Virus record (IMG/VR): IMGVR_UViG_3300009108_000751
Coordinates: 1-64,000 of that record
DNA length: 64,000 nt
Direction: 5' to 3' (one strand)
Position 1 is the first letter of the stretch; every line of letters begins with the position of its first letter. The notes beneath the pieces are model-generated. The model was not told the DNA's origin. It ran no database searches and saw only the letters and a program-made list of their open reading frames with translations. This document shows, one piece after another, positions 36,046 to 64,000 of the stretch. The position numbers and the translations under genes were made by a program.

Positions 36046-37998
36046 ATGAATAAAACGACCAGGAGTGTACAGTCTGCTATGTTCAATACCAGCCTTTTTG
36101 ATACAAAACCCCAGATAAAAATCCCCGCTGAAGCTAAAGTAGTTTTTGTTTCAGATATGTTTGTTGAAGATTACGTTGGAGGTGCGGAACTTACTTCCGA
36201 AGCTTTAATCCAATCATCTCCCTTTACTGTCTATAAGCTTCACTCCAAAGACGTGAATTTGGATACTCTTTCCCAGGGTCACGACAAGTTCTGGATATTT
36301 GGTAACTTCTCGGCGATGGACTACAAGCTGATCCCGTCTATTGTTGCTAATATGAGATATGCGATCTTAGAATATGATTATAAGTTCTGCAGGTATCGAT
36401 CACCCGAAAAGCACCTGGAAATAGAAGGAAATAAATGCGACTGTCATGAGCACATTCATGGAAAAATAGTCTCTGCATTGTTTGAGGGTGCAAAATCTAT
36501 ATGGTGGATGTCTGAAAAGCAGATGGAAATCCAGCATTCTCGATTTCCCTTTCTGTCTAAGAAGCCAAACACAGTATTATCGTCAGTTTTTGATGAGGAT
36601 TTTTTCTTAACTGCAAAAGCCTTGCGCACTAAGCACAAAGATAAAAAAAGCAATAACTGGATTGTTATGGGATCTGCTTCTTGGATAAAAGGAGTAGATG
36701 ATGCAAAAAAATATTGTGAAGATAACAATTTAGAATATGAGGTTGTCTGGAACCTTCCTTATGAAGAGTGTTTAGATAAGTTAGCTAGCAGTAAAGGCCT
36801 GGTATTTCTCCCCAAGGGGGCTGATACATGTCCCCGACTTGTAATCGAGGCAAAGATTTTGGGTTGCGAACTAGTCTTGAATGACAATGTTCAACATAAA
36901 GATGAGGAATGGTTTTCAACTGATGATATGATCGATACTGAGTCATATCTTTACGCTGCAAGAGATAGATTCTGGAATGGGATTAAGAGCGATATGGAGT
37001 TTAAAACAACAATAAGCGGTTACACTACAACTAAGGATTGCATCGAGCAAAATTATCCCTGGAAAGAATGCATTACATCTATGTTGGGTTTTTGTAATGA
37101 AGTAGTAGTAGTTGATGGAGGATCCAAGGATGGGACTTGGGAAGAGCTGAAATCCTGGTCTGAAAAGGAAGAAAAGCTTGTAATTCATCAAGAAGTTAGA
37201 GATTGGAATCATGAGCGGTTCGCCGTATTTGACGGACTCCAGAAGGCTCTTGCAAGATCTCTTTGCACAGGCGAATACTGCTGGCAAATGGACTGTGATG
37301 AAGTTGTTCATGAAAATGATTATGAAAAGATAATCGGGTTATGTAGAAACTTTCCTCACAATATTGATCTTATAGCAATGCCTGTTATAGAGTTTTGGGG
37401 AGGTCCTGAGAAGGTCCGTGCCGATATTTTTCCCTGGAAGTGGAGAGTAAGTAGGAATAAACCTCACATTACTCACGGAATTCCAGCAAATTTAAGAAAG
37501 TTCGATGAGAACGGACATGTATATTCAGCACCAGGCTCGGACGGATGTGACTACATTAGGTCTGATAGTTTCCAGATTGTCCCGTGTGGAAATTTCTATA
37601 CACAGGATGTGGATAATGTTAGACAGCAAGTTAACGTAAACTACCAAGCAAAAGAAGCATACCAGAATTGGTTCAACCAGGTTCTCGATGCTTTCCCATG
37701 CGTTTACCACTTTTCATGGTGGGATCTTGAGCGAAAAATTAGAACATACCGAGATTACTGGGGGAAACACTGGAAGTCACTTTATAACGAGGGGAAAGAA
37801 GATACTTCTGAGAATAATATGATGTTTGACACCCCGTGGAGTGAAGTAACAGAAGAAATGATCGTGGAAAGAGCTGCCTTAATGAAAGAAAAGTTAGGTG
37901 GCTGGGTATGGCACACCAAGTGGAATGGTGAGGATGAAACTACGCACATTGAATGCAGCAAGGACCTTCCGGAAGTGATCAAAAAATGGATCAACTAA
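36046..37998 (+). CDS. fused GT-B (GT4-like) plus GT-A (GT2-like) glycosyltransferase
   Basis: KGADTCPRLVIEAK (GT-B); VVVDGGSKDG, WQMDCDE (GT-A). Confidence 0.75.
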   Translation: MNKTTRSVQSAMFNTSLFDTKPQIKIPAEAKVVFVSDMFVEDYVGGAELTSEALIQSSPFTVYKLHSKDVNLDTLSQGHDKFWIFGNFSAMDYKLIPSIVANMRYAILEYDYKFCRYRSPEKHLEIEGNKCDCHEHIHGKIVSALFEGAKSIWWMSEKQMEIQHSRFPFLSKKPNTVLSSVFDEDFFLTAKALRTKHKDKKSNNWIVMGSASWIKGVDDAKKYCEDNNLEYEVVWNLPYEECLDKLASSKGLVFLPKGADTCPRLVIEAKILGCELVLNDNVQHKDEEWFSTDDMIDTESYLYAARDRFWNGIKSDMEFKTTISGYTTTKDCIEQNYPWKECITSMLGFCNEVVVVDGGSKDGTWEELKSWSEKEEKLVIHQEVRDWNHERFAVFDGLQKALARSLCTGEYCWQMDCDEVVHENDYEKIIGLCRNFPHNIDLIAMPVIEFWGGPEKVRADIFPWKWRVSRNKPHITHGIPANLRKFDENGHVYSAPGSDGCDYIRSDSFQIVPCGNFYTQDVDNVRQQVNVNYQAKEAYQNWFNQVLDAFPCVYHFSWWDLERKIRTYRDYWGKHWKSLYNEGKEDTSENNMMFDTPWSEVTEEMIVERAALMKEKLGGWVWHTKWNGEDETTHIECSKDLPEVIKKWIN

Positions 37999-38705
37999 AA
38001 GTAGTATTTATTGTTCCTTCTTACAATATTTCTACTAATATTTCCAAGCTATTAGGATCTCTAACTGAGCAGGAAAATAAAAACTGGGAGTGCATCATAA
38101 TAGATGATATCTCAACAGATGATACTTGGGAAAGTCTAAAAAAACATACAAATAATGACGATAGAGTCTCAGTCATAAAAAACGAAGAGAAAAAATACGC
38201 TCTTCGAAATATTGTAGACCACGCCCGAAAACTACAATTTGATGAAAATATTATTATTGCTGTAGTTGATGGCGATGACTCTCTTTGTAACCCTAAAACA
38301 GTTGATATCCTTCTAAATGAGTACGAAAAAGGTAGTCAAGTAGTTTGGACAGCACATCGTTGGGACACAAACGGAATGAACATCTCAGGACCAATCCCGC
38401 ATCACATTAATCCCTACTTTTGGCCCTGGAGATCATCTCATTTAAGAACATTCAAGGCGTCGCTACTGAGCAAGATAAGTGATAGAAACTTTAAAAACAT
38501 AAGAGGTGAGTGGTTTAAGAGAGGATATGATCAAGCACTTATGCTACCCTTGATGTACGTAGCAGATTTGTTTACTTACGTTCCTGAAGTCTGCTACCTC
38601 TACAATATAGACTCTTCGTCAATTCCCTCGGAAGAACGTAATTGGTGTGAAAGAGACCAGATATCAACAATCAATTTTGTTCGGGCAAGAGGGTTTGTTA
38701 AATGA
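37986..38705 (+). CDS. GT2 family glycosyltransferase
   Basis: IVPSYN, IIDDISTD, VVDGDD, YDQAL. Confidence 0.8.
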   Translation: MDQLKVVFIVPSYNISTNISKLLGSLTEQENKNWECIIIDDISTDDTWESLKKHTNNDDRVSVIKNEEKKYALRNIVDHARKLQFDENIIIAVVDGDDSLCNPKTVDILLNEYEKGSQVVWTAHRWDTNGMNISGPIPHHINPYFWPWRSSHLRTFKASLLSKISDRNFKNIRGEWFKRGYDQALMLPLMYVADLFTYVPEVCYLYNIDSSSIPSEERNWCERDQISTINFVRARGFVK

Positions 38706-39595
38706 GATTTCTATTCGATAACATAGATTTCAATTCTAATTCTGGCCCAAATAGCTTTGGAAGAAAGCTAGCACTCTCGCTAATAAAAAGAGGGCACACC
38801 ATCAATAGTACAGATGAGGTAGACGTCCAGCTATCATTTATTCAGGCAACACAAAAAGTTGCACCACTAATCCAGAGATTGGACGGAATATACTTCAACT
38901 CCGACCAAGACTGGAAAAAACTAAATGATCCTATCAAGAAAACATACGATGCTGCTGATGGTGTAGTCTATCAATCTAATTTTAATAAGATGCTGACTGA
39001 GAAATATTTCGGACTAAAAGAAGTGAGCACAGTTATTCACAATGGTACAGATCTTAATGCTATAGAGGCGATAGAGCCGCTAAAAAATGCTACTATTGAT
39101 AATTTTGAGAATGTGTGGTGCTGCGCTTCTTCTTGGCGCCCTCATAAAAGATTAACTGAAAATATTAGATATTTTCGAGAGCATTCGTCTGAGAATGACT
39201 GTCTAGTAATAGCCGGAGATAATGCAGATCTTGAAATTAATCATGACAGGATTTTCTTTTGTGGAAATCTGCAATGGGACCAGCTTATCTCTCTCTATAA
39301 AAGATCAAGATACTTCCTTCACTTAGCACTAATGGATCACTGTCCAAATGTAGTTATTGATGCTCGAGCATCTGGGTGCCACATTATTTGTGCAAGTTCT
39401 GGGGGAACTAGTGAGATAGCAGGATTAGATTCCACGATAGTTCAAGACATGACGTGGGATTACTCACCATTTAAGCTTTACTCACCCCCTGCTTTGGATT
39501 TTACTAAAACCGTGACCGGAAACATAGAATCAAATTTAGATGTAAATTATTGTGCAGATCAATATATTCAATTTGCGGAGACTCTAGTTTTATGA
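38702..39595 (+). CDS. GT4 family glycosyltransferase
   Basis: SGPNSF, VIHNG, DHCPNVVIDARASG. Confidence 0.8.
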   Translation: MRFLFDNIDFNSNSGPNSFGRKLALSLIKRGHTINSTDEVDVQLSFIQATQKVAPLIQRLDGIYFNSDQDWKKLNDPIKKTYDAADGVVYQSNFNKMLTEKYFGLKEVSTVIHNGTDLNAIEAIEPLKNATIDNFENVWCCASSWRPHKRLTENIRYFREHSSENDCLVIAGDNADLEINHDRIFFCGNLQWDQLISLYKRSRYFLHLALMDHCPNVVIDARASGCHIICASSGGTSEIAGLDSTIVQDMTWDYSPFKLYSPPALDFTKTVTGNIESNLDVNYCADQYIQFAETLVL

Positions 39596-40509
39596 AGATT
39601 TTTGTATTGGCACCAAGAGAAAATTGGATTTGTGATCGAATAGCTGATGAGTGGAAGAGGAATACTAGAGATATTTCTACCGACAACATAGAAGAAGCAG
39701 ATGTTATCTGGTTGCTTGCAGGCTGGTGCTGGAACCACATACCTCAGCAATTGCTGGCTACCAAGAAGGTAGTTTTGACTGTGCACCACATCGTCCCTGA
39801 AAAATTTAGCGAGCAAAAACAGCAAGAATTCGCTTTTAGAGACCAGTTTATTGATGCTTATCATGTTCCTAATCGAAAGACAGCAGATCTGGTAAGTCAA
39901 ATGACGAGCAAACCTATTTTTATTGCTTGTTATTGGTATGATCCAGAATCCTGGAAAGAGATGCCTCGAGAAGAATGCAAGAAGTCTCTTGGTCTACCTG
40001 AGGAAAAGTTCATCGTAGGGTCTTTTCAACGGGATACTGAGGGTGGAACTCGGAGCCCTAAGCTGGAAAAAGGTCCTGATCTTTTCTGTGATTATTTATC
40101 CATTTTAAAAAATGAGAAAGATATTCATGTTCTCCTCGGAGGATGGAGAAGGGAATACGTTATTGATCGGTTAGAGGCAGAAAAAATACCCTATACTTTT
40201 ATTGAGAAAGCATCTTTAGAAATGCTAGGGACCATGTATAATGCATGTGATCTTTATGTTGTAGGGTCTCGCTATGAAGGAGGCCCCCAAGCTATTCTTG
40301 AAGCAGCGTCAACTAAAACCCCTATAATTTCACGAGATGTTGGAATTGCAATTGATGTTCTTGATCCCTACTGTATTGTGGATATTCCCTGCCAGTCTTG
40401 GATCCCCCACCAAGAAAGTGTTGAGAGAAATTATAAAAATGTTCAAAAATTCAATATTATGAATCACAAGAACAACTATCTGCAAATGTTTGAGAGAATT
40501 AATAAATGA
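39592..40509 (+). CDS. GT4 family glycosyltransferase
   Basis: KLEKGPD, SRYEGGPQAILEA, ISRDVG. Confidence 0.8.
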   Translation: MKIFVLAPRENWICDRIADEWKRNTRDISTDNIEEADVIWLLAGWCWNHIPQQLLATKKVVLTVHHIVPEKFSEQKQQEFAFRDQFIDAYHVPNRKTADLVSQMTSKPIFIACYWYDPESWKEMPREECKKSLGLPEEKFIVGSFQRDTEGGTRSPKLEKGPDLFCDYLSILKNEKDIHVLLGGWRREYVIDRLEAEKIPYTFIEKASLEMLGTMYNACDLYVVGSRYEGGPQAILEAASTKTPIISRDVGIAIDVLDPYCIVDIPCQSWIPHQESVERNYKNVQKFNIMNHKNNYLQMFERINK

Positions 40510-41477
40510 ACAAGCGCGCACTAATTACCGGAATTAACGGGATGGATGGAAGTCATTTAGCGGATCTTTTGCTCGATAAGGGTTATGAAGTTTTCGGCAT
40601 GGAGAGAAGGTCTTCATCTAAAAACAGGTCAAATACCCAGCATCTTGAAGGAAATATTTCCTTTGTAAACGGTGACCTGACTGATCAAAATTCCCTTATG
40701 AGGGTTTTAAAAGATTGCAAACCTAACGAAATCTATAACCTAGGAGCCCAGTCTTTTGTGGGTGAAAGCTGGAATACACCTGAGCATACATCAAATGTAA
40801 CAGGACTGGGTGTCCTACGAATGCTCGAGGCAATTAGGGAAACTGACAAGAATATTAAATTCTACCAGGCCAGCAGTTCAGAGATGTTCGGCAGAATGGT
40901 AGAGAATCCAGCGAGGGAAACTACGCCTTTTTATCCTCGAAGTCCTTACGGGGTTTCCAAGCTTTATGGACACTGGATCACTAAGAATTATCGAGAATCA
41001 TATGAGATGTTTGCATGCTCTGGCATTCTGTTCAACCACGAGTCAGAGCGCCGCGGCCATGAATTCGTAACTAGAAAGATATCAGATGGCGTTGCAAAGA
41101 TTCACCTAGGCCTAGCTGATCATATTTCTCTCGGTACTCTTGATTCTAAGCGTGACTGGGGATACGCTCCTGACTATGTAGCAGCAATGTGGTTAATGAT
41201 GCAGCAAGACAACCCAGAGGACTTTGTTATCTCCACTGGAGAGACCCACTCTATAAGAGAATTTTTAGATGTAGCATTTTCTTGTATCGGTATTACCGAC
41301 TGGAAAGATTATATTAAGCAGGATCCAAGGTTTATGCGACCTGCAGAAGTCGACGTGCTTAGAGGGGATTCTTCTCAGGCATTGAGTAAATTAGGGTGGA
41401 AGCCTAAAACAACATTTAAGGAGCTTGTGGAAAAAATGGTACGTCATGACATTAAGCTCTTAGGGGGTTCCTCATGA
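40506..41477 (+). CDS. gmd: GDP-mannose 4,6-dehydratase
   Basis: ALITGINGMDGSHLA, YNLGAQSFV, YQASSSEMFG, PRSPYGVSK, LFNHESERRG, RDWG. Confidence 0.95.
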   Translation: MNKRALITGINGMDGSHLADLLLDKGYEVFGMERRSSSKNRSNTQHLEGNISFVNGDLTDQNSLMRVLKDCKPNEIYNLGAQSFVGESWNTPEHTSNVTGLGVLRMLEAIRETDKNIKFYQASSSEMFGRMVENPARETTPFYPRSPYGVSKLYGHWITKNYRESYEMFACSGILFNHESERRGHEFVTRKISDGVAKIHLGLADHISLGTLDSKRDWGYAPDYVAAMWLMMQQDNPEDFVISTGETHSIREFLDVAFSCIGITDWKDYIKQDPRFMRPAEVDVLRGDSSQALSKLGWKPKTTFKELVEKMVRHDIKLLGGSS

Positions 41478-42256
41478 GCCAGAGCCATATCATAGACTTT
41501 TCTAAACTCACAACAGGGGCGCAAGAATTGACTATTCCAGAAAGAACTGGAAACATAAAAAAAGTGATGATTCATGAAAAACTTAAGTCTCTTGGATTGT
41601 CTGTAGAAGATTTAAGACTCGGAGATTTTGATCAGATAGGTGAATTGACTGCTAAGAAAAAGAGGGATCCAGGTTCTGAACTTTACAAATCAGTTGGAGC
41701 ATTTTTTAGACCTAACTATGAACGCGGGATTTTAATTTATTCTCTCATTAAGCACTACAATATCAAGTCTTTTCTGGAGATAGGTTTTGGAAGAGGATAT
41801 GGGACTATGTGTGCCGCCTTAGCCATGTCCGAAAACGGAGGAGGAAAGATAACATCTATCGACCCAAATTTTGACCAAGACTTTCTGAATCAATTATCGA
41901 ATGTCTTTCCCCAAGAGTGGTTCCAAATGATGCAGTTCATTCAGGGTAAATCACAAGATTATCTTCCTACTACTGAAGAAAAATTTGATTTCATCTATAT
42001 TGATGGAGACCACACTTATGCTGCAACAAAAAGAGACTGGGAGCTTTGCAAAGATCGATATAATAAGCTTCTCCTCTTTGATGACTACCATCTTCCTGGG
42101 AAAGTTCAAAAAGACATTGAGTGCTCAAATCTTATTGATCAAATTGAGGATGATTCTAAAGAGTTGATCATCCAGGATAGAAGAATATTCCTCGATGACA
42201 GGGGATATACAGATGATCAAATTGATTATGGGCAGGTTCTTTTAACTAAGACATAA
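41474..42256 (+). CDS. class I SAM methyltransferase (Methyltransf_24-like)
   Basis: FLEIGFGRG, FDFIYIDGDHTY, LFDDY. Confidence 0.8.
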   Translation: MSQSHIIDFSKLTTGAQELTIPERTGNIKKVMIHEKLKSLGLSVEDLRLGDFDQIGELTAKKKRDPGSELYKSVGAFFRPNYERGILIYSLIKHYNIKSFLEIGFGRGYGTMCAALAMSENGGGKITSIDPNFDQDFLNQLSNVFPQEWFQMMQFIQGKSQDYLPTTEEKFDFIYIDGDHTYAATKRDWELCKDRYNKLLLFDDYHLPGKVQKDIECSNLIDQIEDDSKELIIQDRRIFLDDRGYTDDQIDYGQVLLTKT

Positions 42257-42257
42257 G

Positions 42258-49410: not shown

Positions 49411-49421
49411 GAGAGGTGTGC

Positions 49422-57016: not shown

Positions 57017-57878
57017 ATTAGAAGATCTCCCGGATCACGGGCTATCAAGAAAAGAAATTCTGAACATCCAGGCTCAAATGAATGCTTTTATAGACAAGCA
57101 TGAGCACCGCTCTGTAAATTACCGGCTCGGTATGCATCAAATTAGAGACCTGGAGATTGAAAGTCATTTTCTTTTTAACCGCTGGTCAATGACCAAAGAT
57201 TTAGAAAAAAGATGGCAGTCAGTGTGGGAGAGTTCAAAAAGATTGAGAGAGATGCTTATCGAAAGCAAAGCCGGAAAAAAAGATATTAGAGTTCTTGATA
57301 TCGGGTGTGGTCACTGTGCGTACTGGCCTATTCTAAGCAAATATAATGTCACAAAATTCACAGGAATAGATTTGTTTGACCTAACTACTATAGCCAGAGT
57401 CCAGGAATCATTAGGAGGCCTGTTCGAGCCTAAGGTGGCGCAACCAGTGTTAGGGACCGTATTGAGTAGCGAGAATATCGGCCTATTTGAGGTAGGCAAA
57501 GTCTTCGATAAAAATCTTCTAATTCCTGAAAGCGCCGAAGTATCAAACTATTTTGCTGCAATGCTGATGGTATGCGCAACATCCGTCGGCGCCTTAAGCG
57601 CATTAAACAACTTAGATCTTACTCACAAGCTGATCAAAAATATGTTACCTGATGCTAGCACTCGTCTTTTAATGTCGAAGGCTGAGAATTTTGAGGCTAT
57701 GCTAGGAGAAGATGAAAAATTTGATATCATCATGTGCGCCGGCGCCCATCCAGGGAAACCAATTCCCGGTGAAGGTGGAGGTGGCAAAAACATAGGAGTG
57801 CCGCCAGATCTTCTTGATAAAATAGCAGCAAAGCACTTAGCCTCCGGAGGTGCAGTAGCACATGTGCATAATGTTTAG
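57009..57878 (+). CDS. class I SAM methyltransferase
   Basis: VLDIGCG, GIDL, FDIIMC. Confidence 0.65.
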   Translation: MSELEDLPDHGLSRKEILNIQAQMNAFIDKHEHRSVNYRLGMHQIRDLEIESHFLFNRWSMTKDLEKRWQSVWESSKRLREMLIESKAGKKDIRVLDIGCGHCAYWPILSKYNVTKFTGIDLFDLTTIARVQESLGGLFEPKVAQPVLGTVLSSENIGLFEVGKVFDKNLLIPESAEVSNYFAAMLMVCATSVGALSALNNLDLTHKLIKNMLPDASTRLLMSKAENFEAMLGEDEKFDIIMCAGAHPGKPIPGEGGGGKNIGVPPDLLDKIAAKHLASGGAVAHVHNV

Positions 57879-57887: not shown

Positions 57888-58961
57888 ATGAATGAATTAG
57901 ATTTTCTGTGGGAAAAAATAAGATCAGGGAAACCTTTTTTCATCGCAGAGGCAGGGGTAAATCACTTAGGGTCTCTTGATCTCGGTGAGCGCCTTATTAA
58001 GGAAGCCGCAATGGCAGGAGCTCACGCAATAAAGTTCCAGTCATATAAGGCAGCAAATCTCTGTACGAAAGATGCGCCTAGATTCTGGGACTGGGAAGGC
58101 GAGCTCGAAGAGGATGGATCACAATTTGATTCTTACTCTCATTTAGATTCTTTCGGGGAAGCTGAGCATGCTGAACTAAAGAGAATGTGCGATGAGTATG
58201 ACATTGAGTTTATGTCTACTCCGTTTGATGATGAAGCTACAGACTACTTAGATAGAGTCGGCATCAATGCTTATAAGATTGCATCATGTGATGTTACCAA
58301 TCACCCCCTTTTAAAGCATGTGGGATCGAAGAAAAAGATTGTAATGCTATCCACGGGAGCGGCTAGCTTACAGGACATAGAAGAAGCAGTTGAAGTTCTA
58401 GAAGAAGCAGGAACAGACAAGATTGTTATTATGCACTGCAATCTAAAGTATCCTACTGATCCTGATCAAATAAACCTGTCAATGATCAAGTCAATTCAGG
58501 AAAAGTTCGGGGAAAAATATGCATACGGACTTTCAGATCATACTATGACTGTTGAGACGCCTGCATTCAGCCTTATGCTCGGTGCAAACGTAGTCGAAAA
58601 ACACTACACTGTAGACAAGACGCTCGATAAAAGCGCCGACCATTGGCTTTCTGTGGATCCAGCCCAAGTTAAAGAAATTGTTCGTCTTATGGACCTGTCA
58701 CATGTAATGATGGGTACATCTGAAGTTAAAGAATGTACTGAAAGTGAAGAGCGCGCCAAAATGTATGCTCGAAGAAGCGTCGTATCTCTAAAGCCCATTA
58801 AGGCCGGAGAAGTTTTCACATCTGATAATATTGGGTGCAAGCGACCGGGCACTGGGATATCACCAAAGATGTTTGATAAGATTTTAGGTACTACTGCAGC
58901 GCAAGACATTAAAGATGACACTCTTTTGACAACTGACGATTTGACAGAGCTAGGAAAATAA
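57888..58961 (+). CDS. neuB: N-acetylneuraminate (nonulosonic acid) synthase with C-terminal SAF domain
   Basis: IAEAGVNHLG, AIKFQ, STPFD, KIAS, LSTG, HC..KYP, GLSDH, EKHYT, KRPGTG. Confidence 0.92.
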   Translation: MNELDFLWEKIRSGKPFFIAEAGVNHLGSLDLGERLIKEAAMAGAHAIKFQSYKAANLCTKDAPRFWDWEGELEEDGSQFDSYSHLDSFGEAEHAELKRMCDEYDIEFMSTPFDDEATDYLDRVGINAYKIASCDVTNHPLLKHVGSKKKIVMLSTGAASLQDIEEAVEVLEEAGTDKIVIMHCNLKYPTDPDQINLSMIKSIQEKFGEKYAYGLSDHTMTVETPAFSLMLGANVVEKHYTVDKTLDKSADHWLSVDPAQVKEIVRLMDLSHVMMGTSEVKECTESEERAKMYARRSVVSLKPIKAGEVFTSDNIGCKRPGTGISPKMFDKILGTTAAQDIKDDTLLTTDDLTELGK

Positions 58962-58962: not shown

Positions 58963-59820
58963 ATGAAGATTGGTATTTGCGGCCAAGGTTTTGTAGGAAC
59001 TGCTGTTCGAGAGGGCATGAGAGATTTTTTTGATCTTGCCACTTATGACAAGTTTAAAGCGGAGGACTTTGCAGTCGAGAGCCTTGCAGTGCTTGCTCGA
59101 GACTGTGAGGTTATTTTTGTTTGCTTGCCAACACCGATGAGAAAGTCAGGTGAGTGCGACACAAGAATAGTCGAAGGTGTTGTAAAAGAGATCGATGAGA
59201 TTTGTGGAGCAAATAATCTTGAAAATCGCGTAGCTGTGATCAAGTCAACTATTCCGCCAGGCACTACAGCAGGTCTCAACAAAGTAGTAAAAAACATCCA
59301 GGTTGTTTTTAATCCAGAGTTTTTGACAGAAGCCAATGCAATCAACGATTACAAGAATCAGACCAGAATTATTTTAGGTGGCCCAAGACCTGGAACTTCG
59401 AAAATGAAGACAATATTTGCGAAGGCTTTTCCTAACGCATCGATCATTAAGACGGGATCCAATACTGCCGAGATGGTTAAATACTTTACTAACTGCTTTC
59501 TTGCCACCAAAGTTAGCTTTTCTAATGAGCTACGTCAGATTTGCGAGAAGTCTAAAGTTGATTATGACAAGGTCGTAGAATACGGTCTTTACGACCCGAG
59601 AATAGGGAAGTCTCACTTTTCATCTCCTGGCCCAGATGGCTCATACGGTTTCGGAGGTCACTGCTTTCCAAAAGATATCAATGCCTTAATGTTTCTTGCA
59701 AGAGAAAAAGGCATCGATCCCAGTGTATTGCAAGCTGTCTGGGCTAAAAATCTTGAGGTAAGATCCCCTGAGCATCGTGATTGGGAAGCAATGTCTGGTA
59801 GAGCGGTGTCGGAGGATTAA
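58963..59820 (+). CDS. ugd: UDP-glucose/GDP-mannose 6-dehydrogenase (short form)
   Basis: GQGFVG, CLPTP, IKSTIPPG, NPEFL, AEMVKY..N.FLA, FGGHCFPKD. Confidence 0.88.
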   Translation: MKIGICGQGFVGTAVREGMRDFFDLATYDKFKAEDFAVESLAVLARDCEVIFVCLPTPMRKSGECDTRIVEGVVKEIDEICGANNLENRVAVIKSTIPPGTTAGLNKVVKNIQVVFNPEFLTEANAINDYKNQTRIILGGPRPGTSKMKTIFAKAFPNASIIKTGSNTAEMVKYFTNCFLATKVSFSNELRQICEKSKVDYDKVVEYGLYDPRIGKSHFSSPGPDGSYGFGGHCFPKDINALMFLAREKGIDPSVLQAVWAKNLEVRSPEHRDWEAMSGRAVSED

Positions 59821-60701
59821 TGAAAGCTCTGGTTACCGGCGGGTGCGGATTTATCGGTTCTCACATAGTCGAAGAACTCCTGTCCATGGGCAATAGGGTT
59901 ATCGTGATTGATGATGAGTCTGCTAACGAGAATCATAATTTCTATAAGTTCGATGGCGCAGAATATCATAAGCTTGATATCTGTGATGATACCACGTCAA
60001 GTCTTTACGAAGGAGTGGATGTCGTGTTTCATCTTGCAGCAAGATCAAGGATTCAGCCGACCATCGACGATCCTTCAGGAGCATTTGATGTTAATGTTCT
60101 CGGAACATCTCGGGTTCTTAATCATGCTAAAAATGCAGGCGTTAAAAAGGTAATCTACTCTAGTAGCTCTTCTTGCTATGGTCACAAGAATAAGCCTCCG
60201 CACCACGAGGAGATGACACCTGACTGTCTTACACCTTACTCTCTTTCAAAGAAGCAGGGTGAAGAGCTCTGCAAGATGTTCTCAGACCTATACGGTTTAA
60301 GCACAATAACATTACGCTATTTTAATGTGTATGGTCCAAGGGAGCCGTTGAAAGGCCAATACGCCCCTGTTGTAGGCCTTTTCAAGCGCATGAAAGAAAC
60401 AGGTGAGAAGCTAACCATTGTAGGAGATGGTGAACAGCGAAGAGATTTTACGTACATTAAAGATGTCGTTCGAGCTAACATCATGTCTGCAGACTCCAAA
60501 GTTCATCATGGTCTCTTCAATATTGGTACAGGTAGAAACTACTCCATTAATCAGGTAGCAGATCTTGTCGGAGGAGAGAAGTCTTACATTCCTTCTCGAT
60601 CTGGTGAAGCCCGCGAGACTATGGCTGATATCTCCAAGGCCACGCAAATCCTAGGGTGGTCACCTAGCCACCGATTAGAAGATACTGTACTTTCTTATTA
60701 G
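59820..60701 (+). CDS. NAD-dependent nucleotide-sugar epimerase/dehydratase
   Basis: TGGCGFIGSH, FHLAA, PYSLSK, RYFNVYGP, RDFTY. Confidence 0.9.
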   Translation: MKALVTGGCGFIGSHIVEELLSMGNRVIVIDDESANENHNFYKFDGAEYHKLDICDDTTSSLYEGVDVVFHLAARSRIQPTIDDPSGAFDVNVLGTSRVLNHAKNAGVKKVIYSSSSSCYGHKNKPPHHEEMTPDCLTPYSLSKKQGEELCKMFSDLYGLSTITLRYFNVYGPREPLKGQYAPVVGLFKRMKETGEKLTIVGDGEQRRDFTYIKDVVRANIMSADSKVHHGLFNIGTGRNYSINQVADLVGGEKSYIPSRSGEARETMADISKATQILGWSPSHRLEDTVLSY

Positions 60702-60719: not shown

Positions 60720-61544
60720 ATGATATTCCCTACCGGTAAACCCCATATCTCATTTTCTGAGCTCTTTGCTTGGAAAGAATGCCCGTATCGGCATAAACTT
60801 TTACATATTGACAAGCTCGGTTCTTTTGAGCCCTCACCCTATCTTGGTTTTGGAACCGGTGTTCATGCTTCTTGCGAAGAGTATATCGAATCTAGAGAGA
60901 TGAATAAGGAGTTAGCTTTCAAGGAGATCGACGATTACTGGGATGAGAATCAAGAGGGGATCACAGCCTATATTAAGGCCAACGGTTTTTGTAAGTATTC
61001 ACCTGAGCGTGAGCAGTGGAAGCAGATAGCCTCTGACATTCTCGACGATGTCCCTGGTTTCTTAGACGAGACTTTTCCTGGGTGGAAAGGTGTTCAAGCT
61101 GAGGAAGACCTCTACGAATCAATCCAGAATGATGAGATGCAGTTCAAGGGTTTCATCGATGCAGTTATCATCAATAAGAATAAGAAGGGACAGCCAAAGA
61201 TATGGCTCCTTGACTGGAAAACTGCCGGCTGGGGATGGAGACCTCAAAAGAAGCAGGATTTTAATTACCAAATGCAGCTTCTTCTTTACAAGCACTTTTG
61301 GTCTGAGAAACACAATGTCAATCCCAAAGATGTAAAGATAGGCTTTGTCCTCCTCAAGAGAGACGGGAAGAACGGAAAGCGCTGCGAGCTGGTTGAAGTT
61401 TCTGGTTCTGAGGCTAAGCTAGAGAAGGCAACCAAGGTTGTAAGATCCATGCTCGCTGCAGTGCGCAAGGGCTTCTTTCCAAAAAATTACAGTGCATGCC
61501 GATGGTGTGAGTTTAAAGGTACGGAGCACTGTAGCGGTTCTTGA
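60720..61544 (+). CDS. PD-(D/E)XK nuclease (RecB/AddB/Cas4-like)
   Basis: ECP...GTGVH, GFIDAV, DWKT, QLLLY, CRWC.F...C. Confidence 0.82.
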   Translation: MIFPTGKPHISFSELFAWKECPYRHKLLHIDKLGSFEPSPYLGFGTGVHASCEEYIESREMNKELAFKEIDDYWDENQEGITAYIKANGFCKYSPEREQWKQIASDILDDVPGFLDETFPGWKGVQAEEDLYESIQNDEMQFKGFIDAVIINKNKKGQPKIWLLDWKTAGWGWRPQKKQDFNYQMQLLLYKHFWSEKHNVNPKDVKIGFVLLKRDGKNGKRCELVEVSGSEAKLEKATKVVRSMLAAVRKGFFPKNYSACRWCEFKGTEHCSGS

Positions 61545-61598
61545 TTTTTTATAAAAATTAATAGTGTGTGTATGATAATACGCAACCCTGAGGACTAG

Positions 61599-62864
61599 AT
61601 GAAAAAGAAGAAAATTCTATTGTTGAGCGATCACTTATTAAGCACGTCAGGTGTTGGGTGTCAATCTAGGTTTTTATCGCTTGGGCTAGCCCAAAAGGGT
61701 GATTGGACAATCAGGCAACTCGGTGCTGCCATTAAGCACGAAAGTTATGACATGGCACAACCCCACCCGGATATCTTAATTAAGCCCGTCGACGGTTTCG
61801 GCAACAGAGACATGATTCGACAGCTTTTGGCAGTTGAAAAGCCAGATGTGCTTCTGCTTTTCACAGATCCGCGATTTTTTGTCTGGATTTGGCAGATGGA
61901 AGATGAGATACATCAGGTTTGTCCCATCGCATATTGGCATGTGTGGGATAACGATCCATATCCGGAGTTTAATAATGTGTTCTACCAGTCAACAGATCTT
62001 ATTAACTGCCACTCCTACAAGACTTATGAGCTTGTTAGTCAGAGACACCCGACAAAAACTAATTTTATACCTCATGCTCTTCCGGAAGACATTTACTTTC
62101 CTATGAAACCCGAGGAGGTTAAGTCAAATAAAAAGCTTCTTTTAGGTGAAGATAGACTAGATCACTTTACTGGAATCTGGATTAATCGAAACGCTAAGCG
62201 CAAAAGACCGAATGATGTCTTGATGTCTTGGAAGATGTTTTTAGATGACCTGGAAAAAAAGCACGGTCATAGAAATGCAACTTTGATCATGCACACTGAC
62301 CCTTTTGATCAAGAGGGCCCAAATCTACAGAGCACAATGGAGCTACTTGGTATTGTAGATAACGTCTCTATATCAGCGCAGAGGATAGACTTTAATCAAA
62401 TGAATGTCCTTCATAACATATCTGATTTCTGTGTCAATATTGCTCTGAATGAAGGATTTGGGTTAACCACCCTAGAATCAATGCAGTGTGGAAAACCGAT
62501 AATCGCACTTAAGACAGGAGGCCTAACAAGGCAGGTAGTAGATCATAGAGATGGATCTGAGAACGGAATAGCGCTAGATCCTGATGTTAGATCTCTTGTG
62601 GGGAGTCAAATGGTCCCCTATATTTACGAAGACTACTGCAAAAATGAAAGTACTTCTGAGGCTTTTATGAAGATGTATGAGCTCGGACCAGAAGGTAGAA
62701 AGAAACTAGGGCAAAAAGCTAGAGAATATGTGCTGTCAGAATTCAAGCTTGAAAAGACTGTTGATTTGTGGGATGAGAGCTTAACAAAGCTCATCGAAGA
62801 CTGGAAAAATGACAGGGAAAAAATCTATAAACCCTGGAGAATGAAAGAGATGTCAGGAAAATGA
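61599..62864 (+). CDS. GT4 family glycosyltransferase
   Basis: TSGVG, NRNAKRK, NEGFGLTTLESMQCGKP. Confidence 0.85.
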   Translation: MKKKKILLLSDHLLSTSGVGCQSRFLSLGLAQKGDWTIRQLGAAIKHESYDMAQPHPDILIKPVDGFGNRDMIRQLLAVEKPDVLLLFTDPRFFVWIWQMEDEIHQVCPIAYWHVWDNDPYPEFNNVFYQSTDLINCHSYKTYELVSQRHPTKTNFIPHALPEDIYFPMKPEEVKSNKKLLLGEDRLDHFTGIWINRNAKRKRPNDVLMSWKMFLDDLEKKHGHRNATLIMHTDPFDQEGPNLQSTMELLGIVDNVSISAQRIDFNQMNVLHNISDFCVNIALNEGFGLTTLESMQCGKPIIALKTGGLTRQVVDHRDGSENGIALDPDVRSLVGSQMVPYIYEDYCKNESTSEAFMKMYELGPEGRKKLGQKAREYVLSEFKLEKTVDLWDESLTKLIEDWKNDREKIYKPWRMKEMSGK

Positions 62865-64000
62865 GAAAAGTTGTTTTAAGAGCACCTGTTCTTACACAAA
62901 GTGGATACGGAGTTCACAGCAGGCAAGTGGCACGCTGGCTCATCGGCTTAGCAGAAACTAACCAGATCAACTTGACAATTCAATGCGTGCCCTGGGGTGA
63001 TACTACGTGGTTTACTAATGGCGATGCACTTGAGGGATTAATTAATAAGATTTTCAAATATTCGGGAGGAGAGGTTCAAGATGCCGACGTTTCCTTCCAA
63101 GTGATTCTTCCAAATGAGTGGCAAAATATTGCCAAGTATAATGTGGGAATAACTGCAGGAATAGAGACAGATAGGTGCCATCCCAGCTGGATAAACGCAG
63201 TAAACTCTATGCACGCTGTAGTAGTACCGTCAGAGCATGCCAAGAAATGCTTTACAAATACGGGAAGAATAAACAAGGATATTATTGTTATTCCTGAGTC
63301 TTTCCCGGATGTTCTCACCCAAGAACCAGATCTTGAAAAATTTGACTTTAACACCGACTTCAATTTTCTTGTTTTCGGGCAGCTTACAGCCATGAATTTT
63401 CAAGATGATAGAAAAAATATTTTCAACACGCTTAAGGTTCTGGTCAATACTTTCAAAGATAAGGAAGATGTCGGGATTATTCTAAAGTCTAATGTAGGTC
63501 GATCTACAATCATGGATTTTAAGCAAATTCAGGGAGTTTTGACTGCACTCTTAAAATCTATAGGGCACAAAGGAAGTCCAAAAGTTTATCTCTTGCATGG
63601 AAATATGTCTGATGACGATCTACGTGATCTTTATAAGCACCCGAAAGTTAAAGCCCTTGTAACGATGACAAGAGGAGAAGGCTTTGGCCTACCGATCTTA
63701 GAATCAGCTGCATGCGGAGTTCCTGTCGCCGCCACACGCTGGTCAGCCCATACTGATTACATGAAAAGAGATTCTTATTTGAATATCAAATACGATCTTG
63801 TAGAGGTTAGCGATTCCAGAGTTGACGGTAATCTGTTTATCAAGGGAATGAAGTGGGCAGAAGCAAGTGAAAAATCTGCATCTGAGGAGTTAGAAAAGCT
63901 TTATAAGTATTATTCTGTTTATGATAAAAGAGCTCGTGCACACCAGGAGGTAATCCTTGAAAGTCACAGCTTTGATTCGATTCAGGGCAAATACCAAGAG
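62861..64000 (+). CDS. GT4 family glycosyltransferase (runs off the window; absent from the ORF track)
   Basis: MRKVVLRAPVLTQSGYGVHSR, DRKN, TRGEGFGLPILESAACG. Confidence 0.85.
   Translation, partial: MRKVVLRAPVLTQSGYGVHSRQVARWLIGLAETNQINLTIQCVPWGDTTWFTNGDALEGLINKIFKYSGGEVQDADVSFQVILPNEWQNIAKYNVGITAGIETDRCHPSWINAVNSMHAVVVPSEHAKKCFTNTGRINKDIIVIPESFPDVLTQEPDLEKFDFNTDFNFLVFGQLTAMNFQDDRKNIFNTLKVLVNTFKDKEDVGIILKSNVGRSTIMDFKQIQGVLTALLKSIGHKGSPKVYLLHGNMSDDDLRDLYKHPKVKALVTMTRGEGFGLPILESAACGVPVAATRWSAHTDYMKRDSYLNIKYDLVEVSDSRVDGNLFIKGMKWAEASEKSASEELEKLYKYYSVYDKRARAHQEVILESHSFDSIQGKYQE

What the first reader, a model, noticed from the sequence alone, without database searches (positions are those of the whole stretch)
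36046..64000. >=28 kb soluble glycan-synthesis island with no membrane, lipid-carrier or export genes
Seen: ~28 tightly coupled genes including about 12 GT or GT-like ORFs, Gmd, Ugd, an epimerase, NeuB/NeuA, a carbamoyltransferase, three methyltransferases, a kinase, HADs and nucleotidyltransferases. There is no recognisable Wzx, Wzy, Wzz, ABC exporter or initiating phosphoglycosyltransferase, and no evident polytopic membrane protein. Known: bacterial O-antigen/capsule loci normally include these; giant eukaryotic viruses glycosylate their own virions. Inference: a self-contained cytoplasmic pathway making a complex decorated glycan for phage capsid, tail or DNA, for shielding, anti-defence or host mimicry.
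Basis: partly seen in the sequence, partly recalled or inferred. Interest (0 to 1): 0.76.

Follow-up and report, generated by a model that had tools for sequence, protein, structure and literature searches.

The report
Membrane-free glycan island in jumbo phage
A 28-kb run of 30 genes in an uncultured marine jumbo phage encodes a full sugar-activating, sugar-transferring and sugar-decorating toolkit with no membrane or export parts; it most likely coats something of the phage's own (probably virion proteins) with a complex, strain-variable glycan, but the target is not shown.

Summary
Window 36046-64000 (the last gene ends at 64027 in the full record) carries 30 same-strand, overlapping or near-abutting ORFs. 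Eleven are glycosyltransferase (GT) proteins with 12 GT domains. The rest include Gmd, a short Ugd-like dehydrogenase, a UDP-sugar 4-epimerase-like SDR, NeuB, a CMP-sugar synthetase, a NodU-type carbamoyltransferase, two or three methyltransferases, a kinase, HAD phosphatases and nucleotidyltransferases. The window is the start of a 235.7-kb myovirus record. Directly downstream lie baseplate and giant fibre genes, not flippases. The whole record has no WecA/WbaP-type initiator, Wzx or ABC-2 permease. Its only polytopic membrane protein is an M50 protease. At least eight related contigs carry the same island. A strongly conserved two-domain GT heads it, and sugar cassettes are swapped at sharp junctions. 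None of them has a membrane component. That head GT has over 2,500 metagenomic homologue clusters but no match in 50,697 GenBank phage records. Entry enzymes for known DNA glycosylation were not detected. The acceptor remains inferred: virion proteins about 0.4, host envelope via host carriers about 0.3, DNA about 0.1. I rate it a new variant of the known kind "virus-encoded glycan machinery", of moderate to high interest.

The parts
34711..36024 (+). PIN-PhoH ATPase. It is the conserved upstream flank, 21 nt from the first island gene.
   Evidence: Pfam PhoH 2.1e-50 and PIN_4 1.5e-30. It neighbours the head GT in most sampled relatives.
36046..37998 (+). Head or 'anchor' enzyme. A 650-aa two-domain glycosyltransferase: a compact GT-B/GT4-like domain (residues 29-318) and a GT-A/GT2 domain (about 320-630).
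   Evidence: AF2 model pLDDT 90.1. VIA Z 17-19.5 to sucrose-phosphate synthase, BshA, PglA, PimA and WaaG over residues 29-318. Foldseek hits to SunS, RmlT, K4CP and WaaE/KdtX over 320-615. It is 76-80% identical in close relatives and 55% in distant ones. More than 2,535 homologue clusters exist, but none in GenBank phages.
37953..38705 (+). GT2 glycosyltransferase (conserved head block).
   Evidence: PF00535 4.6e-19. 69-74% identity in relatives.
38702..39595 (+). GT4/GT1 glycosyltransferase (conserved head block).
   Evidence: PF00534 1.7e-8. 65-84% identity in relatives.
39550..40509 (+). GT4/GT1 glycosyltransferase (conserved head block).
   Evidence: PF00534 1.8e-11. 67-88% identity in relatives.
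40506..41477 (+). GDP-mannose 4,6-dehydratase (Gmd).
   Evidence: TIGR01472 430.6 bits, above the cut-off of 415. PF16363 1.4e-130.
41474..42256 (+). SAM-dependent O-methyltransferase (Methyltransf_24/Methyltransf_3).
42258..43154 (+). GT4-like glycosyltransferase. DNA homology to the type-B relatives stops at about 43,000-43,031, inside this gene's 3' end.
   Evidence: PF13439 and PF00534 hits near threshold. Junction from blastn.
43103..43609 (+). First gene of the variable cassette: a small protein of unknown function. By eye it carries a glycerophosphodiester-phosphodiesterase-like HRG...EN...E.D motif.
   Evidence: phrog_34507, function unknown. Sequence read; the motif reading is my own and was not tested.
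43587..44219 (+). HAD-IA phosphatase/mutase of the beta-phosphoglucomutase family (cassette).
   Evidence: PF13419 4.1e-27; TIGR02009 6.2e-26, below its cut-off.
44221..44937 (+). Sugar-1-phosphate nucleotidylyltransferase (cassette).
   Evidence: PF00483 4.8e-10. RmlA/GlmU-type NCBIfam hits, all below cut-off.
44927..45772 (+). Possible GT-A (GT2-like) protein; the evidence is weak (cassette).
   Evidence: No Pfam hit. BLASTP 24% over 152 aa to the GT2 at 37953, E 2e-4.
45789..47498 (+). NodU/CmcH-type O-carbamoyltransferase (cassette).
   Evidence: Carbam_trans_C 3.3e-64 and Carbam_trans_N 4.4e-32. About 28% identity to the cyanophage and pelagiphage 'Nol-like' genes.
47525..48358 (+). APH/choline-kinase-like small-molecule kinase (cassette).
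   Evidence: PF01636 2.6e-7.
48349..49410 (+). Fusion protein (cassette). The N-terminal half is a paralogue of the nucleotidyltransferase at 44221. The C-terminal part is HAD-like, resembling a GmhB/polynucleotide-kinase-phosphatase type phosphatase.
   Evidence: BLASTP to 44221, 1.3e-13. HAD_SAK_2 hit and phrog_1238/415 over residues 230-311.
49416..50213 (+). Unknown 265-aa protein (cassette).
   Evidence: No Pfam or PHROG hit.
50243..50923 (+). Second Methyltransf_24 methyltransferase (cassette).
   Evidence: PF13578 6.6e-17.
50916..51692 (+). GT2 glycosyltransferase, the last gene of the variable cassette. Homology to type-B relatives resumes at about 51,676-51,684.
   Evidence: PF00535 2e-11. 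Junction.
51689..52801 (+). GT-B protein of the TagF / polysialyltransferase / capsule-polymerase kind (conserved tail block).
   Evidence: Atlas feature and structure neighbours include Glyphos_transf, A-2_8-polyST, LpxB and Epimerase_2, TM 0.7-0.77. This is a lead, not an alignment. 58-65% identity in all four relatives.
52764..53753 (+). Pol-beta-superfamily nucleotidyltransferase-fold protein. Possibly a sugar O-nucleotidylyl- or phospho-transferase.
   Evidence: Atlas neighbours carry NTP_transf_2, score 0.96-0.98.
53719..54609 (+). Second Pol-beta-fold nucleotidyltransferase-like protein.
   Evidence: Invariant G39, S42, D48 and D50 in 28 homologues. Model pLDDT 90.6. Weak Foldseek similarity to aminoglycoside O-nucleotidyltransferases, E 2e-3.
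54593..55753 (+). Polysaccharide-deacetylase/DUF2334-like protein.
   Evidence: Atlas feature and structure neighbours. DUF2334 genes also occur in the islands of L076 and L077.
55750..56325 (+). CMP-ulosonic-acid synthetase (NeuA/PseF/KdsB family cytidylyltransferase).
   Evidence: PF02348 6.9e-20. PseF 1.7e-30 and KdsB hits, all below the equivalog cut-offs.
56327..57016 (+). GT2 glycosyltransferase.
   Evidence: PF00535 2.6e-30.
57009..57878 (+). Possible class-I methyltransferase (weak).
   Evidence: Methyltransf_23/25/11 hits at E about 2e-3, below cut-offs.
57888..58961 (+). Nonulosonic-acid synthase (NeuB family plus SAF domain). The sugar specificity is undetermined.
   Evidence: PF03102 5.2e-73. 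NeuB_NnaB 325 bits and PseI 262 bits, both below cut-offs. Best solved relatives are SpsE, PseI and NeuB.
58963..59820 (+). Short nucleotide-sugar 6-dehydrogenase (Ugd-like) that lacks the C-terminal UDP-binding domain. This short form is conserved in relatives.
   Evidence: TIGR03026 201 bits over profile positions 61-295. The GxGxxG and GGxCxxKD motifs are visible. 67-92% identity in relatives.
59820..60701 (+). UDP-sugar 4-epimerase-like SDR. Possibly a UDP-GlcA 4-epimerase, given its Ugd-like neighbour.
   Evidence: PF01370 2.5e-55. Best solved relatives are UDP-Glc, UDP-GlcNAc and UDP-GlcA 4-epimerases.
60720..61544 (+). PD-(D/E)XK (RecB/Cas4-like) nuclease embedded in the island. It is part of an older linked set with the next two GT4 genes.
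   Evidence: PF12705 5.4e-24. The nuclease-GT4-GT4 order is kept in distant contigs L045, L049, L055 and L080.
61599..62864 (+). GT4 glycosyltransferase (421 aa).
   Evidence: PF00534 3.6e-10. Weak GT4-conflict hit, 19 bits against a cut-off of 26.
62861..64000 (+). GT4 glycosyltransferase (388 aa) that runs 27 nt past the window end, to 64027. It is the last gene of the island.
   Evidence: PF00534 6.4e-8 on L001:1362-2528. hhalign probability 94% to 61599.

Best explanation
Shown. The island is a virus-encoded glycan assembly line with no membrane parts, in an uncultured marine jumbo myovirus.
- The phage shows traits of the 'moraphage' lineage, whose predicted hosts are Bacteroidota.
- Phage enzymes are predicted to convert host metabolites into activated sugars. 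Gmd would give a GDP-6-deoxyhexose precursor. The Ugd-like enzyme plus the 4-epimerase would give UDP-uronic acids. NeuB plus the cytidylyltransferase would give a CMP-nonulosonic acid. The kinase, nucleotidyltransferases and HAD phosphatases would give a further NDP-sugar or NDP-alcohol-phosphate.
- Eleven soluble GTs are available to assemble these sugars.
- Methyl-, carbamoyl-, deacetylase-like and nucleotidyltransferase-fold enzymes are available to decorate the product.
- The island has a conserved head (two-domain GT, GT2, GT4, GT4, Gmd) and a conserved tail (nuclease, GT4, GT4). Sugar cassettes are exchanged between them.

Inferred. The glycan is built in the cytoplasm on a phage-encoded acceptor. 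The most likely acceptors are virion proteins, such as the giant Ser/Thr-rich fibre proteins encoded just downstream, or the capsid. This would resemble chlorovirus and mimivirus virions, mycobacteriophage capsids and tails, and bacterial flagellin or serine-rich-adhesin glycosylation. Cassette exchange would then give related phages different surface glycotypes.
For: - Gene content is documented.
- All GT genes of the record sit in this one block.
- The block ends 3.7 kb before the gp25 baseplate wedge gene. Nine fibre-like ORFs of 463-2292 aa follow, and several have 20-26% Ser+Thr.
- No initiating phosphoglycosyltransferase, flippase or ABC-2 permease occurs in 235.7 kb, with positive controls. 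No polytopic protein occurs in five compared islands. No membrane family appears in five more contexts.
- The head GT diverges at about the same rate as backbone genes. PhoH is 89/84/69/50% identical where the head GT is 78/80/76/55%. It is found in over 2,500 clusters on large phage contigs. This fits a conserved, phage-encoded acceptor better than variable host glycans.
- An 8.65-kb cassette (43.03-51.68 kb) is replaced at sharp junctions in G002-G004. The replacement carries a different deoxy/branched-sugar set: cytidylyltransferase, PfkB kinase, 4,6-dehydratase, B12-radical-SAM enzyme, split transketolase, RmlC and DegT. Further architectures occur in L071, L076 and L077.
- Entry enzymes for DNA glycosylation were not detected.
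- From general knowledge: a novel glycan of ten or more sugars is unlikely to be accepted by substrate-selective host Wzx or ABC exporters.
Against: - No acceptor was identified. No protein-GT family (Maf, GT41/OGT-TPR, EarP, TibC-type) scored in any island ORF.
- GT2 and GT4 enzymes of LPS and capsule pathways are also soluble or peripheral.
- The closest AlphaFold matches of the head GT's C-domain are LPS-core GTs WaaE, KdtX and LpsC. A distant fused homologue carries a GT9 heptosyltransferase domain.
- The literature usually reads comparable gene sets in cyanomyoviruses as host-surface modification (PMC12801897).
- Expression timing is unresolved. A late-type ATATTTA motif lies at 33130, but a minus-strand gene (34441-34683) sits between it and the island.
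- About 30% of the genome is missing.
Confidence: 0.4

Rival explanations
1. Host-envelope remodelling. The phage supplies only the soluble steps (sugar nucleotides, peripheral GTs, tailoring enzymes). These act on host undecaprenyl-linked or LPS-core intermediates. The altered glycan is exported by the host's own Wzx/Wzy or ABC machinery. The host surface changes late in infection, which could exclude superinfection, stop progeny adsorbing to debris, or help evade grazers.
For: - The gene repertoire is that of O-antigen or capsule loci minus the membrane steps.
- The head GT's C-domain resembles LPS-core GTs WaaE, KdtX and LpsC, TM 0.53-0.57 by hit.
- Related phages carry ADP-heptose-type genes (PfkB kinase plus cytidylyltransferase-like) and a GT9-containing fusion.
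- This is the customary reading of the 13 GT genes and 22 cell-wall genes of cyanophage S-SCSM2R and of P-SSM2 (PMC12801897).
Against: - A lytic jumbo phage gains little from rebuilding a surface it will soon lyse.
- Host exporters are usually selective for their own glycan (general knowledge).
- The head GT is conserved like a core phage gene across a clade that must infect many hosts with different glycans.
- No Gtr-type or other membrane component occurs in any of about ten contexts.
Confidence: 0.3
2. DNA hypermodification. At least the old core (two-domain GT, PD-(D/E)XK nuclease, two GT4s) would glycosylate phage DNA, and the sugar cassettes would diversify the DNA glycan. The nuclease would destroy unmodified DNA.
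For: - The nuclease is persistently linked to the GT4 pair and to head-GT homologues in distant phages.
- Phage DNA GTs are known to include GT-A enzymes resembling TarS/TarP and GT-B enzymes resembling BshA. They can transfer bulky sugars such as Kdo or heptose (bioRxiv 10.1101/2023.12.21.572611). The head GT has the same fold neighbours.
- Weak GT4-conflict hits.
Against: - All known routes need a hydroxylated pyrimidine. No ThyA-family enzyme (for hmC, hmU or 5hoC; PMC13326640) and no C5-methyltransferase were found in 235.7 kb, with working controls. An ordinary ThyX is present.
- The TET/JBP search was negative, but its control did not ring, so it is uninformative.
- Known DNA glycans have one to three sugars, not the product of 11 GTs plus carbamoyl, methyl and nonulosonate chemistry.
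Confidence: 0.1
3. Another soluble target. The pathway would make a free cytoplasmic oligo- or polysaccharide or a glycosylated small molecule (as with mycobacterial methylmannose polysaccharides or compatible solutes). Alternatively it would glycosylate host proteins as part of host take-over.
For: - The pathway is membrane-free and includes methyltransferases.
- Fold neighbours of the head GT's N-domain include sucrose-phosphate synthase, BshA, GlgM and the methylmannose-polysaccharide mannosyltransferase.
Against: - These are generic GT-B matches.
- Strain-level cassette swapping and nonulosonic acid suggest an exposed, recognised surface rather than an internal metabolite. This is inference.
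Confidence: 0.12
4. Artefact. The island would be a bacterial O-antigen or capsule fragment joined to phage DNA by misassembly or binning.
For: GC content is 0.38-0.43 in the island against 0.43-0.50 in the structural region, and 0.50-0.55 in the first 19 kb.
Against: - The same flank-island-baseplate order occurs in independent contigs from other metagenomes: G001 and G002 across the whole island, G003, G004, L062 and an identical 75.5-kb contig.
- All genes share one strand with the structural genes.
- The low GC already starts at about 24 kb, in conserved phage genes.
Confidence: 0.01

Closest known systems
Giant-virus glycosylation machinery (chlorovirus PBCV-1 capsid glycans; mimivirus fibril glycans)
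   Same: - Virus-encoded Gmd, UDP-sugar dehydrogenase, methyltransferases and soluble multi-domain GTs.
- Works without host membrane glycosylation machinery.
- The glycan differs between related viruses.
(Same-column points are from general knowledge. The gene content here is.)
   Different: - The host here is a bacterium and the virus is a tailed phage.
- There is no detectable sequence relationship beyond family level.
- The glycan and its acceptor are unproven here.
- This island also has NeuB/CMP-synthetase, a carbamoyltransferase and nucleotidyltransferase-fold enzymes.
Mycobacteriophage virion glycosylation (Che8-type; Freeman et al. 2023, as cited in PMC12619734 and PMC12801897)
   Same: Phage-encoded soluble GTs modify the phage's own structural proteins in the cytoplasm.
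   Different: - Those loci have a few genes, while this one has 30 genes with its own sugar-nucleotide supply.
- The Che8 paper itself could not be read here.
- No C-terminal acceptor tail was recognised in this phage. The only mucin-like tail found belongs to the gp32 SSB.
'LPS / cell-wall' gene sets of large cyanomyoviruses (P-SSM2, S-SCSM1, S-SCSM2R)
   Same: - Marine T4-like myoviruses with many GTs (13 in S-SCSM2R), NDP-sugar epimerases, KdsA/KdsB and Nol-like carbamoyltransferases.
- Their function is also unknown. Carbamoyltransferase homologues are about 28% identical.
   Different: - No homologue of the head GT exists in any GenBank phage.
- In P-SSM2 the carbamoyltransferase sits among replication and purine genes, not in a glycan operon.
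- Here everything forms one contiguous operon-like block with a conserved head and tail and swappable cassettes.
Bacterial O-antigen / capsule loci
   Same: - Sugar-nucleotide genes plus GT2 and GT4 enzymes plus tailoring enzymes.
- Cassette-like variation between conserved flanks.
   Different: Lacks the initiating phosphoglycosyltransferase, Wzx/Wzy/Wzz or ABC transporter, and any polytopic protein.
Bacterial cytoplasmic protein-glycosylation islands (flagellin Pse/Leg islands; serine-rich-repeat adhesin Gtf clusters)
   Same: - Membrane-free pathways.
- A NeuB-family synthase plus a CMP-synthetase.
- Several soluble GT-A and GT-B enzymes acting in series on a fibrous protein.
   Different: - No Maf (PF01973), GtfA/B pair or DUF1792 domain was detected.
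- The upstream Pse or Leg steps (PseB/C/H/G, LegB/C/H/G) are absent.
'Moraphage' lineage of large aquatic phages (PMC12619734)
   Same: - Large aquatic phage with an Hc1 histone-H1-like gene (33905-34066) and DnaJ.
- Several GT orthogroups belong to the core genome of that lineage.
- Hints of Bacteroidota hosts.
   Different: - Membership was not tested by phylogeny.
- That paper lists four core GT orthogroups but does not describe an island, its cassettes or its lack of membrane genes.

Membership tests
Wzx/Wzy- or ABC-dependent O-antigen/capsule locus | Initiating phosphoglycosyltransferase (WbaP-type PF02397 or WecA-type PF00953) | tested here: not met
   PF00953 gives no match. PF02397 gives only a 26-residue, 14-bit sub-threshold match at 233.7 kb. 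Controls rang in 10-12 of 14 genomes.
Wzx/Wzy- or ABC-dependent O-antigen/capsule locus | Flippase/polymerase or ABC-2 permease (polytopic membrane proteins) | tested here: not met
   PF01943 and PF01061 are absent with working controls. The hydropathy scan finds no polytopic ORF in the island or in four relatives' islands. Wzy_C and Wzz were not searched as families.
Wzx/Wzy- or ABC-dependent O-antigen/capsule locus | Clustered sugar-nucleotide enzymes and GT2/GT4 transferases | tested here: met
Phage DNA glycosylation system | Enzyme creating a hydroxylated pyrimidine: a ThyA-family hydroxymethylase/hydroxylase, or a C5-methyltransferase plus a TET/JBP dioxygenase | tested here: not met
   PF00303 and PF00145 are absent with working controls. 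PF12851 is absent, but its control did not ring, so that test is inconclusive. The record is 70% complete.
Phage DNA glycosylation system | Non-canonical glycosylated base in virion DNA | not testable with these tools
   Needs nucleoside LC-MS.
Virus-encoded virion glycosylation (giant-virus / mycobacteriophage type) | Virus-encoded soluble GTs, with or without own sugar-nucleotide supply, independent of membrane machinery | tested here: met
Virus-encoded virion glycosylation (giant-virus / mycobacteriophage type) | Glycan covalently attached to capsid, tail or fibre proteins | not testable with these tools
   Only indirect evidence exists: position next to the baseplate/fibre module and Ser/Thr-rich fibre ORFs.
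Flagellin-type nonulosonate glycosylation island | NeuB/PseI/LegI-family synthase plus CMP-synthetase | tested here: met
   57888 and 55750. Both score below the equivalog cut-offs, so the sugar identity is open.
Flagellin-type nonulosonate glycosylation island | Maf-type transferase and the UDP-GlcNAc-modifying steps (PseB/C/H/G or LegB/C/H/G or NeuC) | tested here: not met
   No such Pfam or NCBIfam hit in any island ORF. A NeuC-like Epimerase_2 gene does occur in relative L077.
Moraphage lineage (PMC12619734) | Hc1 histone-like protein, DnaJ-type chaperones and core GT orthogroups | tested here: met
   Hc1 at 46.9 bits, DnaJ and the GTs. These are traits reported for the lineage, not a formal definition.
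Moraphage lineage (PMC12619734) | Phylogenetic placement with the 25 published genomes | not tested

The most novel reading that the evidence does not exclude
An abundant, entirely uncultured clade of marine jumbo phages would coat its virions (fibres and/or capsid) with a complex glycan carrying nonulosonate, uronate, 6-deoxyhexose, methyl and carbamoyl groups. The glycan would be started on a conserved phage protein by a clade-specific two-domain GT. It would be diversified by cassette exchange, giving phage 'glycotypes' analogous to bacterial serotypes and to giant-virus fibril glycans.
Probability: 0.35. Interest if true: 0.8.

Novelty: new variant of a known kind. Interest (0 to 1): 0.56.

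Why it matters
Virus-made glycans are established for giant eukaryotic viruses and for a few mycobacteriophages. For the many marine phages that carry 'LPS-like' genes, the target has never been settled.

This locus offers a clean test case:
- All GT genes of the phage lie in one operon-like block.
- Its membrane-free state is conserved across about ten related contexts.
- One head enzyme is highly conserved and can serve as a handle for finding the acceptor.
- Natural cassette variants predict different glycans on an otherwise similar phage backbone.

If virions are the target, phage surface glycotypes would become a new variable in adsorption, defence evasion, grazing and particle stickiness in the ocean. 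If the host envelope is the target, it would show how lytic phages hijack host export with soluble enzymes only.

Tried and rejected
- Close relatives among deposited phages. Megablast of 25 kb gave no match. tblastn of the head GT also gave none. The nearest TerL is only 41% identical, in Flavobacterium phage immuto.
- Ser/Thr-rich acceptor tails. The only mucin-like tail (148560) belongs to a gp32-type SSB, so it was rejected as a lead.
- Paralogy among the unknown trio 51689, 52764 and 53719. hhalign on shallow alignments found nothing. Atlas and structure later showed that 52764 and 53719 have a nucleotidyltransferase fold and are not GTs.
- Transcript evidence. No RNA-seq run holds this phage.
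- Late-promoter argument. ATATTTA occurs 26 times on the + strand and 3 on the - strand. Sixteen of the 26 lie in the 4.9% of the record that is intergenic (binomial p about 4e-15). It precedes the portal, sheath, tube, a tail-fibre gene and gp25. The nearest copy upstream of the island (33130) is separated from it by a tmRNA and a minus-strand sigma70-region-4 gene. I therefore give it little weight.
- The small proteins after the island (64303, 65372) have no Pfam or PDB relatives.
- The P-SSM2 carbamoyltransferase neighbourhood is not a glycan cluster.
- The Freeman 2023 paper is not held in the library.
- The TET/JBP family search was uninformative because its control failed.

Full report
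**Where the window lies**

- The window is bases 1-64000 of a 235,681-bp IMG/VR virus record. The record is linear and CheckV estimates it 70% complete.
- The record is a contractile-tailed phage of the T4-like superfamily. It has a large terminase at 113891, a portal at 115569, two sheath paralogues at 128960 and 132128, a tail tube at 135287, a DnaB helicase, RNR, gp32 and RecA/UvsX.
- Its terminase is at most 41% identical to that of any deposited phage. The best match is Flavobacterium phage immuto.
- It also encodes an Hc1 histone-H1-like protein (33905-34066) and DnaJ. These traits, together with several core GT orthogroups and predicted Bacteroidota hosts, were reported for the recently named 'moraphages' (PMC12619734). 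I did not test membership by phylogeny.

**Checking the observation**

- From 36046 to 64027 there are 30 ORFs on the + strand. Gaps run from -52 to +54 nt. The first ORF starts 21 nt after a PIN-PhoH gene.
- Family scans confirm four GT2 and five GT1/GT4 proteins.
- They also confirm Gmd (above the equivalog cut-off), two Methyltransf_24 enzymes and one weak methyltransferase.
- Further hits are a beta-phosphoglucomutase-family HAD, a sugar-1-P nucleotidylyltransferase, a NodU-type carbamoyltransferase and an APH-type kinase.
- The remaining hits are a CMP-ulosonate synthetase, a NeuB-family synthase, a nucleotide-sugar dehydrogenase and a 4-epimerase-like SDR.

The ORFs without a Pfam hit were partly resolved:
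- 51689 is TagF/polysialyltransferase-like GT-B. This is an Atlas lead only.
- 44927 is weakly GT2-like.
- 48349 is a nucleotidyltransferase-HAD fusion.
- 54593 is polysaccharide-deacetylase/DUF2334-like.
- 52764 and 53719 have the Pol-beta nucleotidyltransferase fold. The G..S...D.D signature is invariant in 28 homologues, the model has pLDDT 90.6, and similarity to aminoglycoside O-nucleotidyltransferases is weak.
- 60720 is a PD-(D/E)XK nuclease.
- The 'Ugd' keeps its NAD and catalytic-Cys motifs but lacks the C-terminal domain. This short form is conserved in relatives.

**Absence of membrane and export functions**

- A hydropathy scan of all 264 ORFs finds no polytopic protein in the island. 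It finds one in the record, which is an M50 protease. The two-helix protein at 210290 is FtsH.
- Family searches of the six-frame record, with positive controls, found no WecA-type initiator, Wzx or ABC-2 permease. The WbaP-family search gave only a 14-bit scrap.
- All GT2 and GT1 matches of the record lie inside 36-64 kb.
- Downstream of the window, the last GT4 ends at 64027. Then come five small or unknown ORFs, a gp25 baseplate wedge gene at 67719, and nine fibre-like ORFs of up to 2292 aa, one with a Laminin_G_3 lectin fold.

**Relatives**

- An identical 75.5-kb contig and several contigs at 70-92% protein identity, from other metagenomes, carry the same arrangement.
- In G001 and G002 the whole island could be followed from PhoH to the baseplate, spanning 31.0 and 33.2 kb.
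- Two blocks are conserved in all four compared relatives: the head (36046-43154) and the tail (51689-64027).
- The 8.65-kb middle (43.03-51.68 kb) is replaced in G002-G004 at sharp DNA junctions.
- The replacement encodes a different set: cytidylyltransferase-like, PfkB kinase, NDP-sugar 4,6-dehydratase, B12-radical-SAM enzyme, split transketolase, RmlC-type epimerase and DegT aminotransferase.
- Further architectures occur in L071, L075, L076 and L077, including a NeuC-like 2-epimerase.
- A second variable spot lies around 54.6-57.9 kb in G002.
- No island in any relative has a polytopic protein or a membrane Pfam family.

**The head enzyme**

- The 650-aa first protein folds with high confidence (pLDDT 90.1) into two domains.
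- Residues 29-318 form a compact GT-B/GT4-like domain, with Z 17-19.5 to sucrose-phosphate synthase, BshA, PglA, PimA and WaaG.
- Residues 320-630 form a GT-A/GT2 domain. The nearest solved structures are the peptide S-glycosyltransferases SunS and ThuS, RmlT, chondroitin polymerase and TarS/TarP. The nearest AlphaFold models are the LPS-core GTs WaaE, KdtX and LpsC.
- These fold matches do not tell which acceptor the enzyme uses.
- More than 2,535 clusters at 57-88% identity exist on marine contigs of up to 375 kb. The protein lies near PIN-PhoH even in the most distant sampled contexts.
- No GenBank phage has a homologue.
- Its divergence tracks that of PhoH, so it behaves like a vertically inherited core gene.
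- Each domain also occurs alone or in other fusions.
- In more distant phages the order is PD-(D/E)XK nuclease, GT4, GT4, then a head-GT homologue, compact and sometimes fused.
- The present island thus looks like an old four-to-five-gene module into which about 23 kb of sugar genes has been inserted.

**Likely chemistry (inferred from family membership)**

- Gmd gives a GDP-4-keto-6-deoxymannose-derived sugar. No separate reductase was identified. From general knowledge, the chlorovirus Gmd is bifunctional.
- The Ugd-like enzyme plus the 4-epimerase would give UDP-uronic acids.
- NeuB plus the cytidylyltransferase would give a CMP-nonulosonate. Both score below the equivalog cut-offs for Neu5Ac and Pse, so its identity is unknown.
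- The kinase, nucleotidyltransferases and HAD phosphatases would give another NDP-activated sugar or alcohol phosphate. A heptose or phospho-alcohol route is my guess.
- The TagF-like enzyme and the two nucleotidyltransferase-fold proteins may add phosphodiester-linked or nucleotidyl substituents.
- O-methylation, O-carbamoylation and de-N-acetylation would decorate the product.

**The acceptor**

- DNA is unlikely. All known routes start from a ThyA-family enzyme (hmC, hmU, 5hoC; PMC13326640) or from a C5-methyltransferase plus a TET enzyme (bioRxiv 10.1101/2023.12.21.572611). Neither a ThyA-family enzyme nor a C5-methyltransferase is present, and ThyX is. The TET search lacked a working control, and 30% of the genome is unseen. 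The persistent nuclease linkage also keeps a small probability alive.
- Several points favour a phage-encoded acceptor over the host envelope. The head GT is conserved like a core gene across a clade that must span many hosts. No membrane helper appears in about ten contexts. The block sits directly before the baseplate/fibre module. Cassettes are swapped between near-identical backbones.
- Other points favour the host envelope. The repertoire is O-antigen-like, some fold neighbours are LPS-core-like, and this is the customary reading of cyanophage gene sets (PMC12801897).
- Expression timing could not be used. A strongly strand-biased, intergenic ATATTTA motif precedes the portal, sheath, tube, a fibre gene and gp25. 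It also sits at 33130 and is conserved there in relatives. However, a tmRNA and a minus-strand sigma70-region-4 gene lie between that site and the island.
- No RNA data hold this phage.

**Verdict**

'Phage, membrane-free, complex decorated glycan' is supported. 'Self-contained' and 'on capsid/tail/DNA' are not shown.
- My estimates for the target are: virion proteins 0.4, host envelope 0.3, DNA 0.1, other soluble target 0.12.
- In kind, this is a new variant of virus-encoded glycan machinery. It is the largest contiguous, modular example I could document in a tailed phage lineage, in a clade with no cultured member.

Noticed in passing
window 34087-34408 (+): Phage-encoded tmRNA (Rfam RF00023, 137.8 bits) with tag peptide ANDDFDIYAIAA. 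It lies between the Hc1-like gene and the PIN-PhoH gene.
   Followed up: partly
window 33905-34066 (+): Histone-H1-like Hc1 protein (PF07432, 46.9 bits). The same gene is present at the same place in relatives L072, L075, L076 and L077. The trait is reported for 'moraphages'.
   Followed up: partly
window 34441-34683 (-): An 80-aa protein with a clear sigma70 region-4 helix-turn-helix. It is the only minus-strand gene in this stretch. The overlapping + strand ORF 34466-34714 is spurious. It may be a transcription regulator.
   Followed up: partly
window 26359-30813 (+): A complete yeaH(DUF444)-ycgB(SpoVR)-prkA(yeaG) triad in a phage, 83-94% conserved in relatives. It is preceded by a coiled-coil protein with a C-terminal hydrophobic helix and an ATATTTA motif.
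   Followed up: no
window 1-19500: GC content is 0.50-0.56 and third-codon-position GC is 0.6-0.75, against 0.31-0.46 in the island. ORFs here are short and lie on both strands, and a tRNA-Met sits at 5198. By coordinate arithmetic, the independent 75.5-kb contig should start at about window 16.2 kb and so span the GC shift; only the stretch from about 24.7 kb on was actually compared. Different origin, or a highly expressed early region?
   Followed up: partly
whole record, e.g. 33130, 67652, 115519, 128917, 135255: The heptamer ATATTTA occurs 26 times on the + strand and 3 on the - strand. Sixteen of the 26 lie in the 4.9% of the record that is intergenic. It sits 20-67 nt before the portal, sheath, tube, a tail-fibre gene and the gp25 gene. 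It is a candidate late promoter of this clade and is conserved at homologous sites in relatives.
   Followed up: partly
window 60720-64000 and loci L045, L049, L055, L080: The linkage of PD-(D/E)XK nuclease, GT4, GT4 and a head-GT homologue is kept in distant phages, and is partly fused into a 1080-aa protein in L080. The reason for the nuclease linkage is unknown.
   Followed up: partly
G000:C1:128960-135232: Two tandem tail-sheath paralogues of about 1040 aa each.
   Followed up: no
G000:C1:210290-234852: A cluster of proteostasis genes in a phage: FtsH, two trypsin/HtrA-like proteases, DnaJ, an M50 site-2 protease and a VWA/MopE-repeat protein.
   Followed up: no
L001/L002: G000:C1:64018-64299: A 93-aa protein with one N-terminal transmembrane or signal helix directly follows the last GT. 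It is conserved in G001 and G002. It is the only hydrophobic protein next to the island.
   Followed up: no
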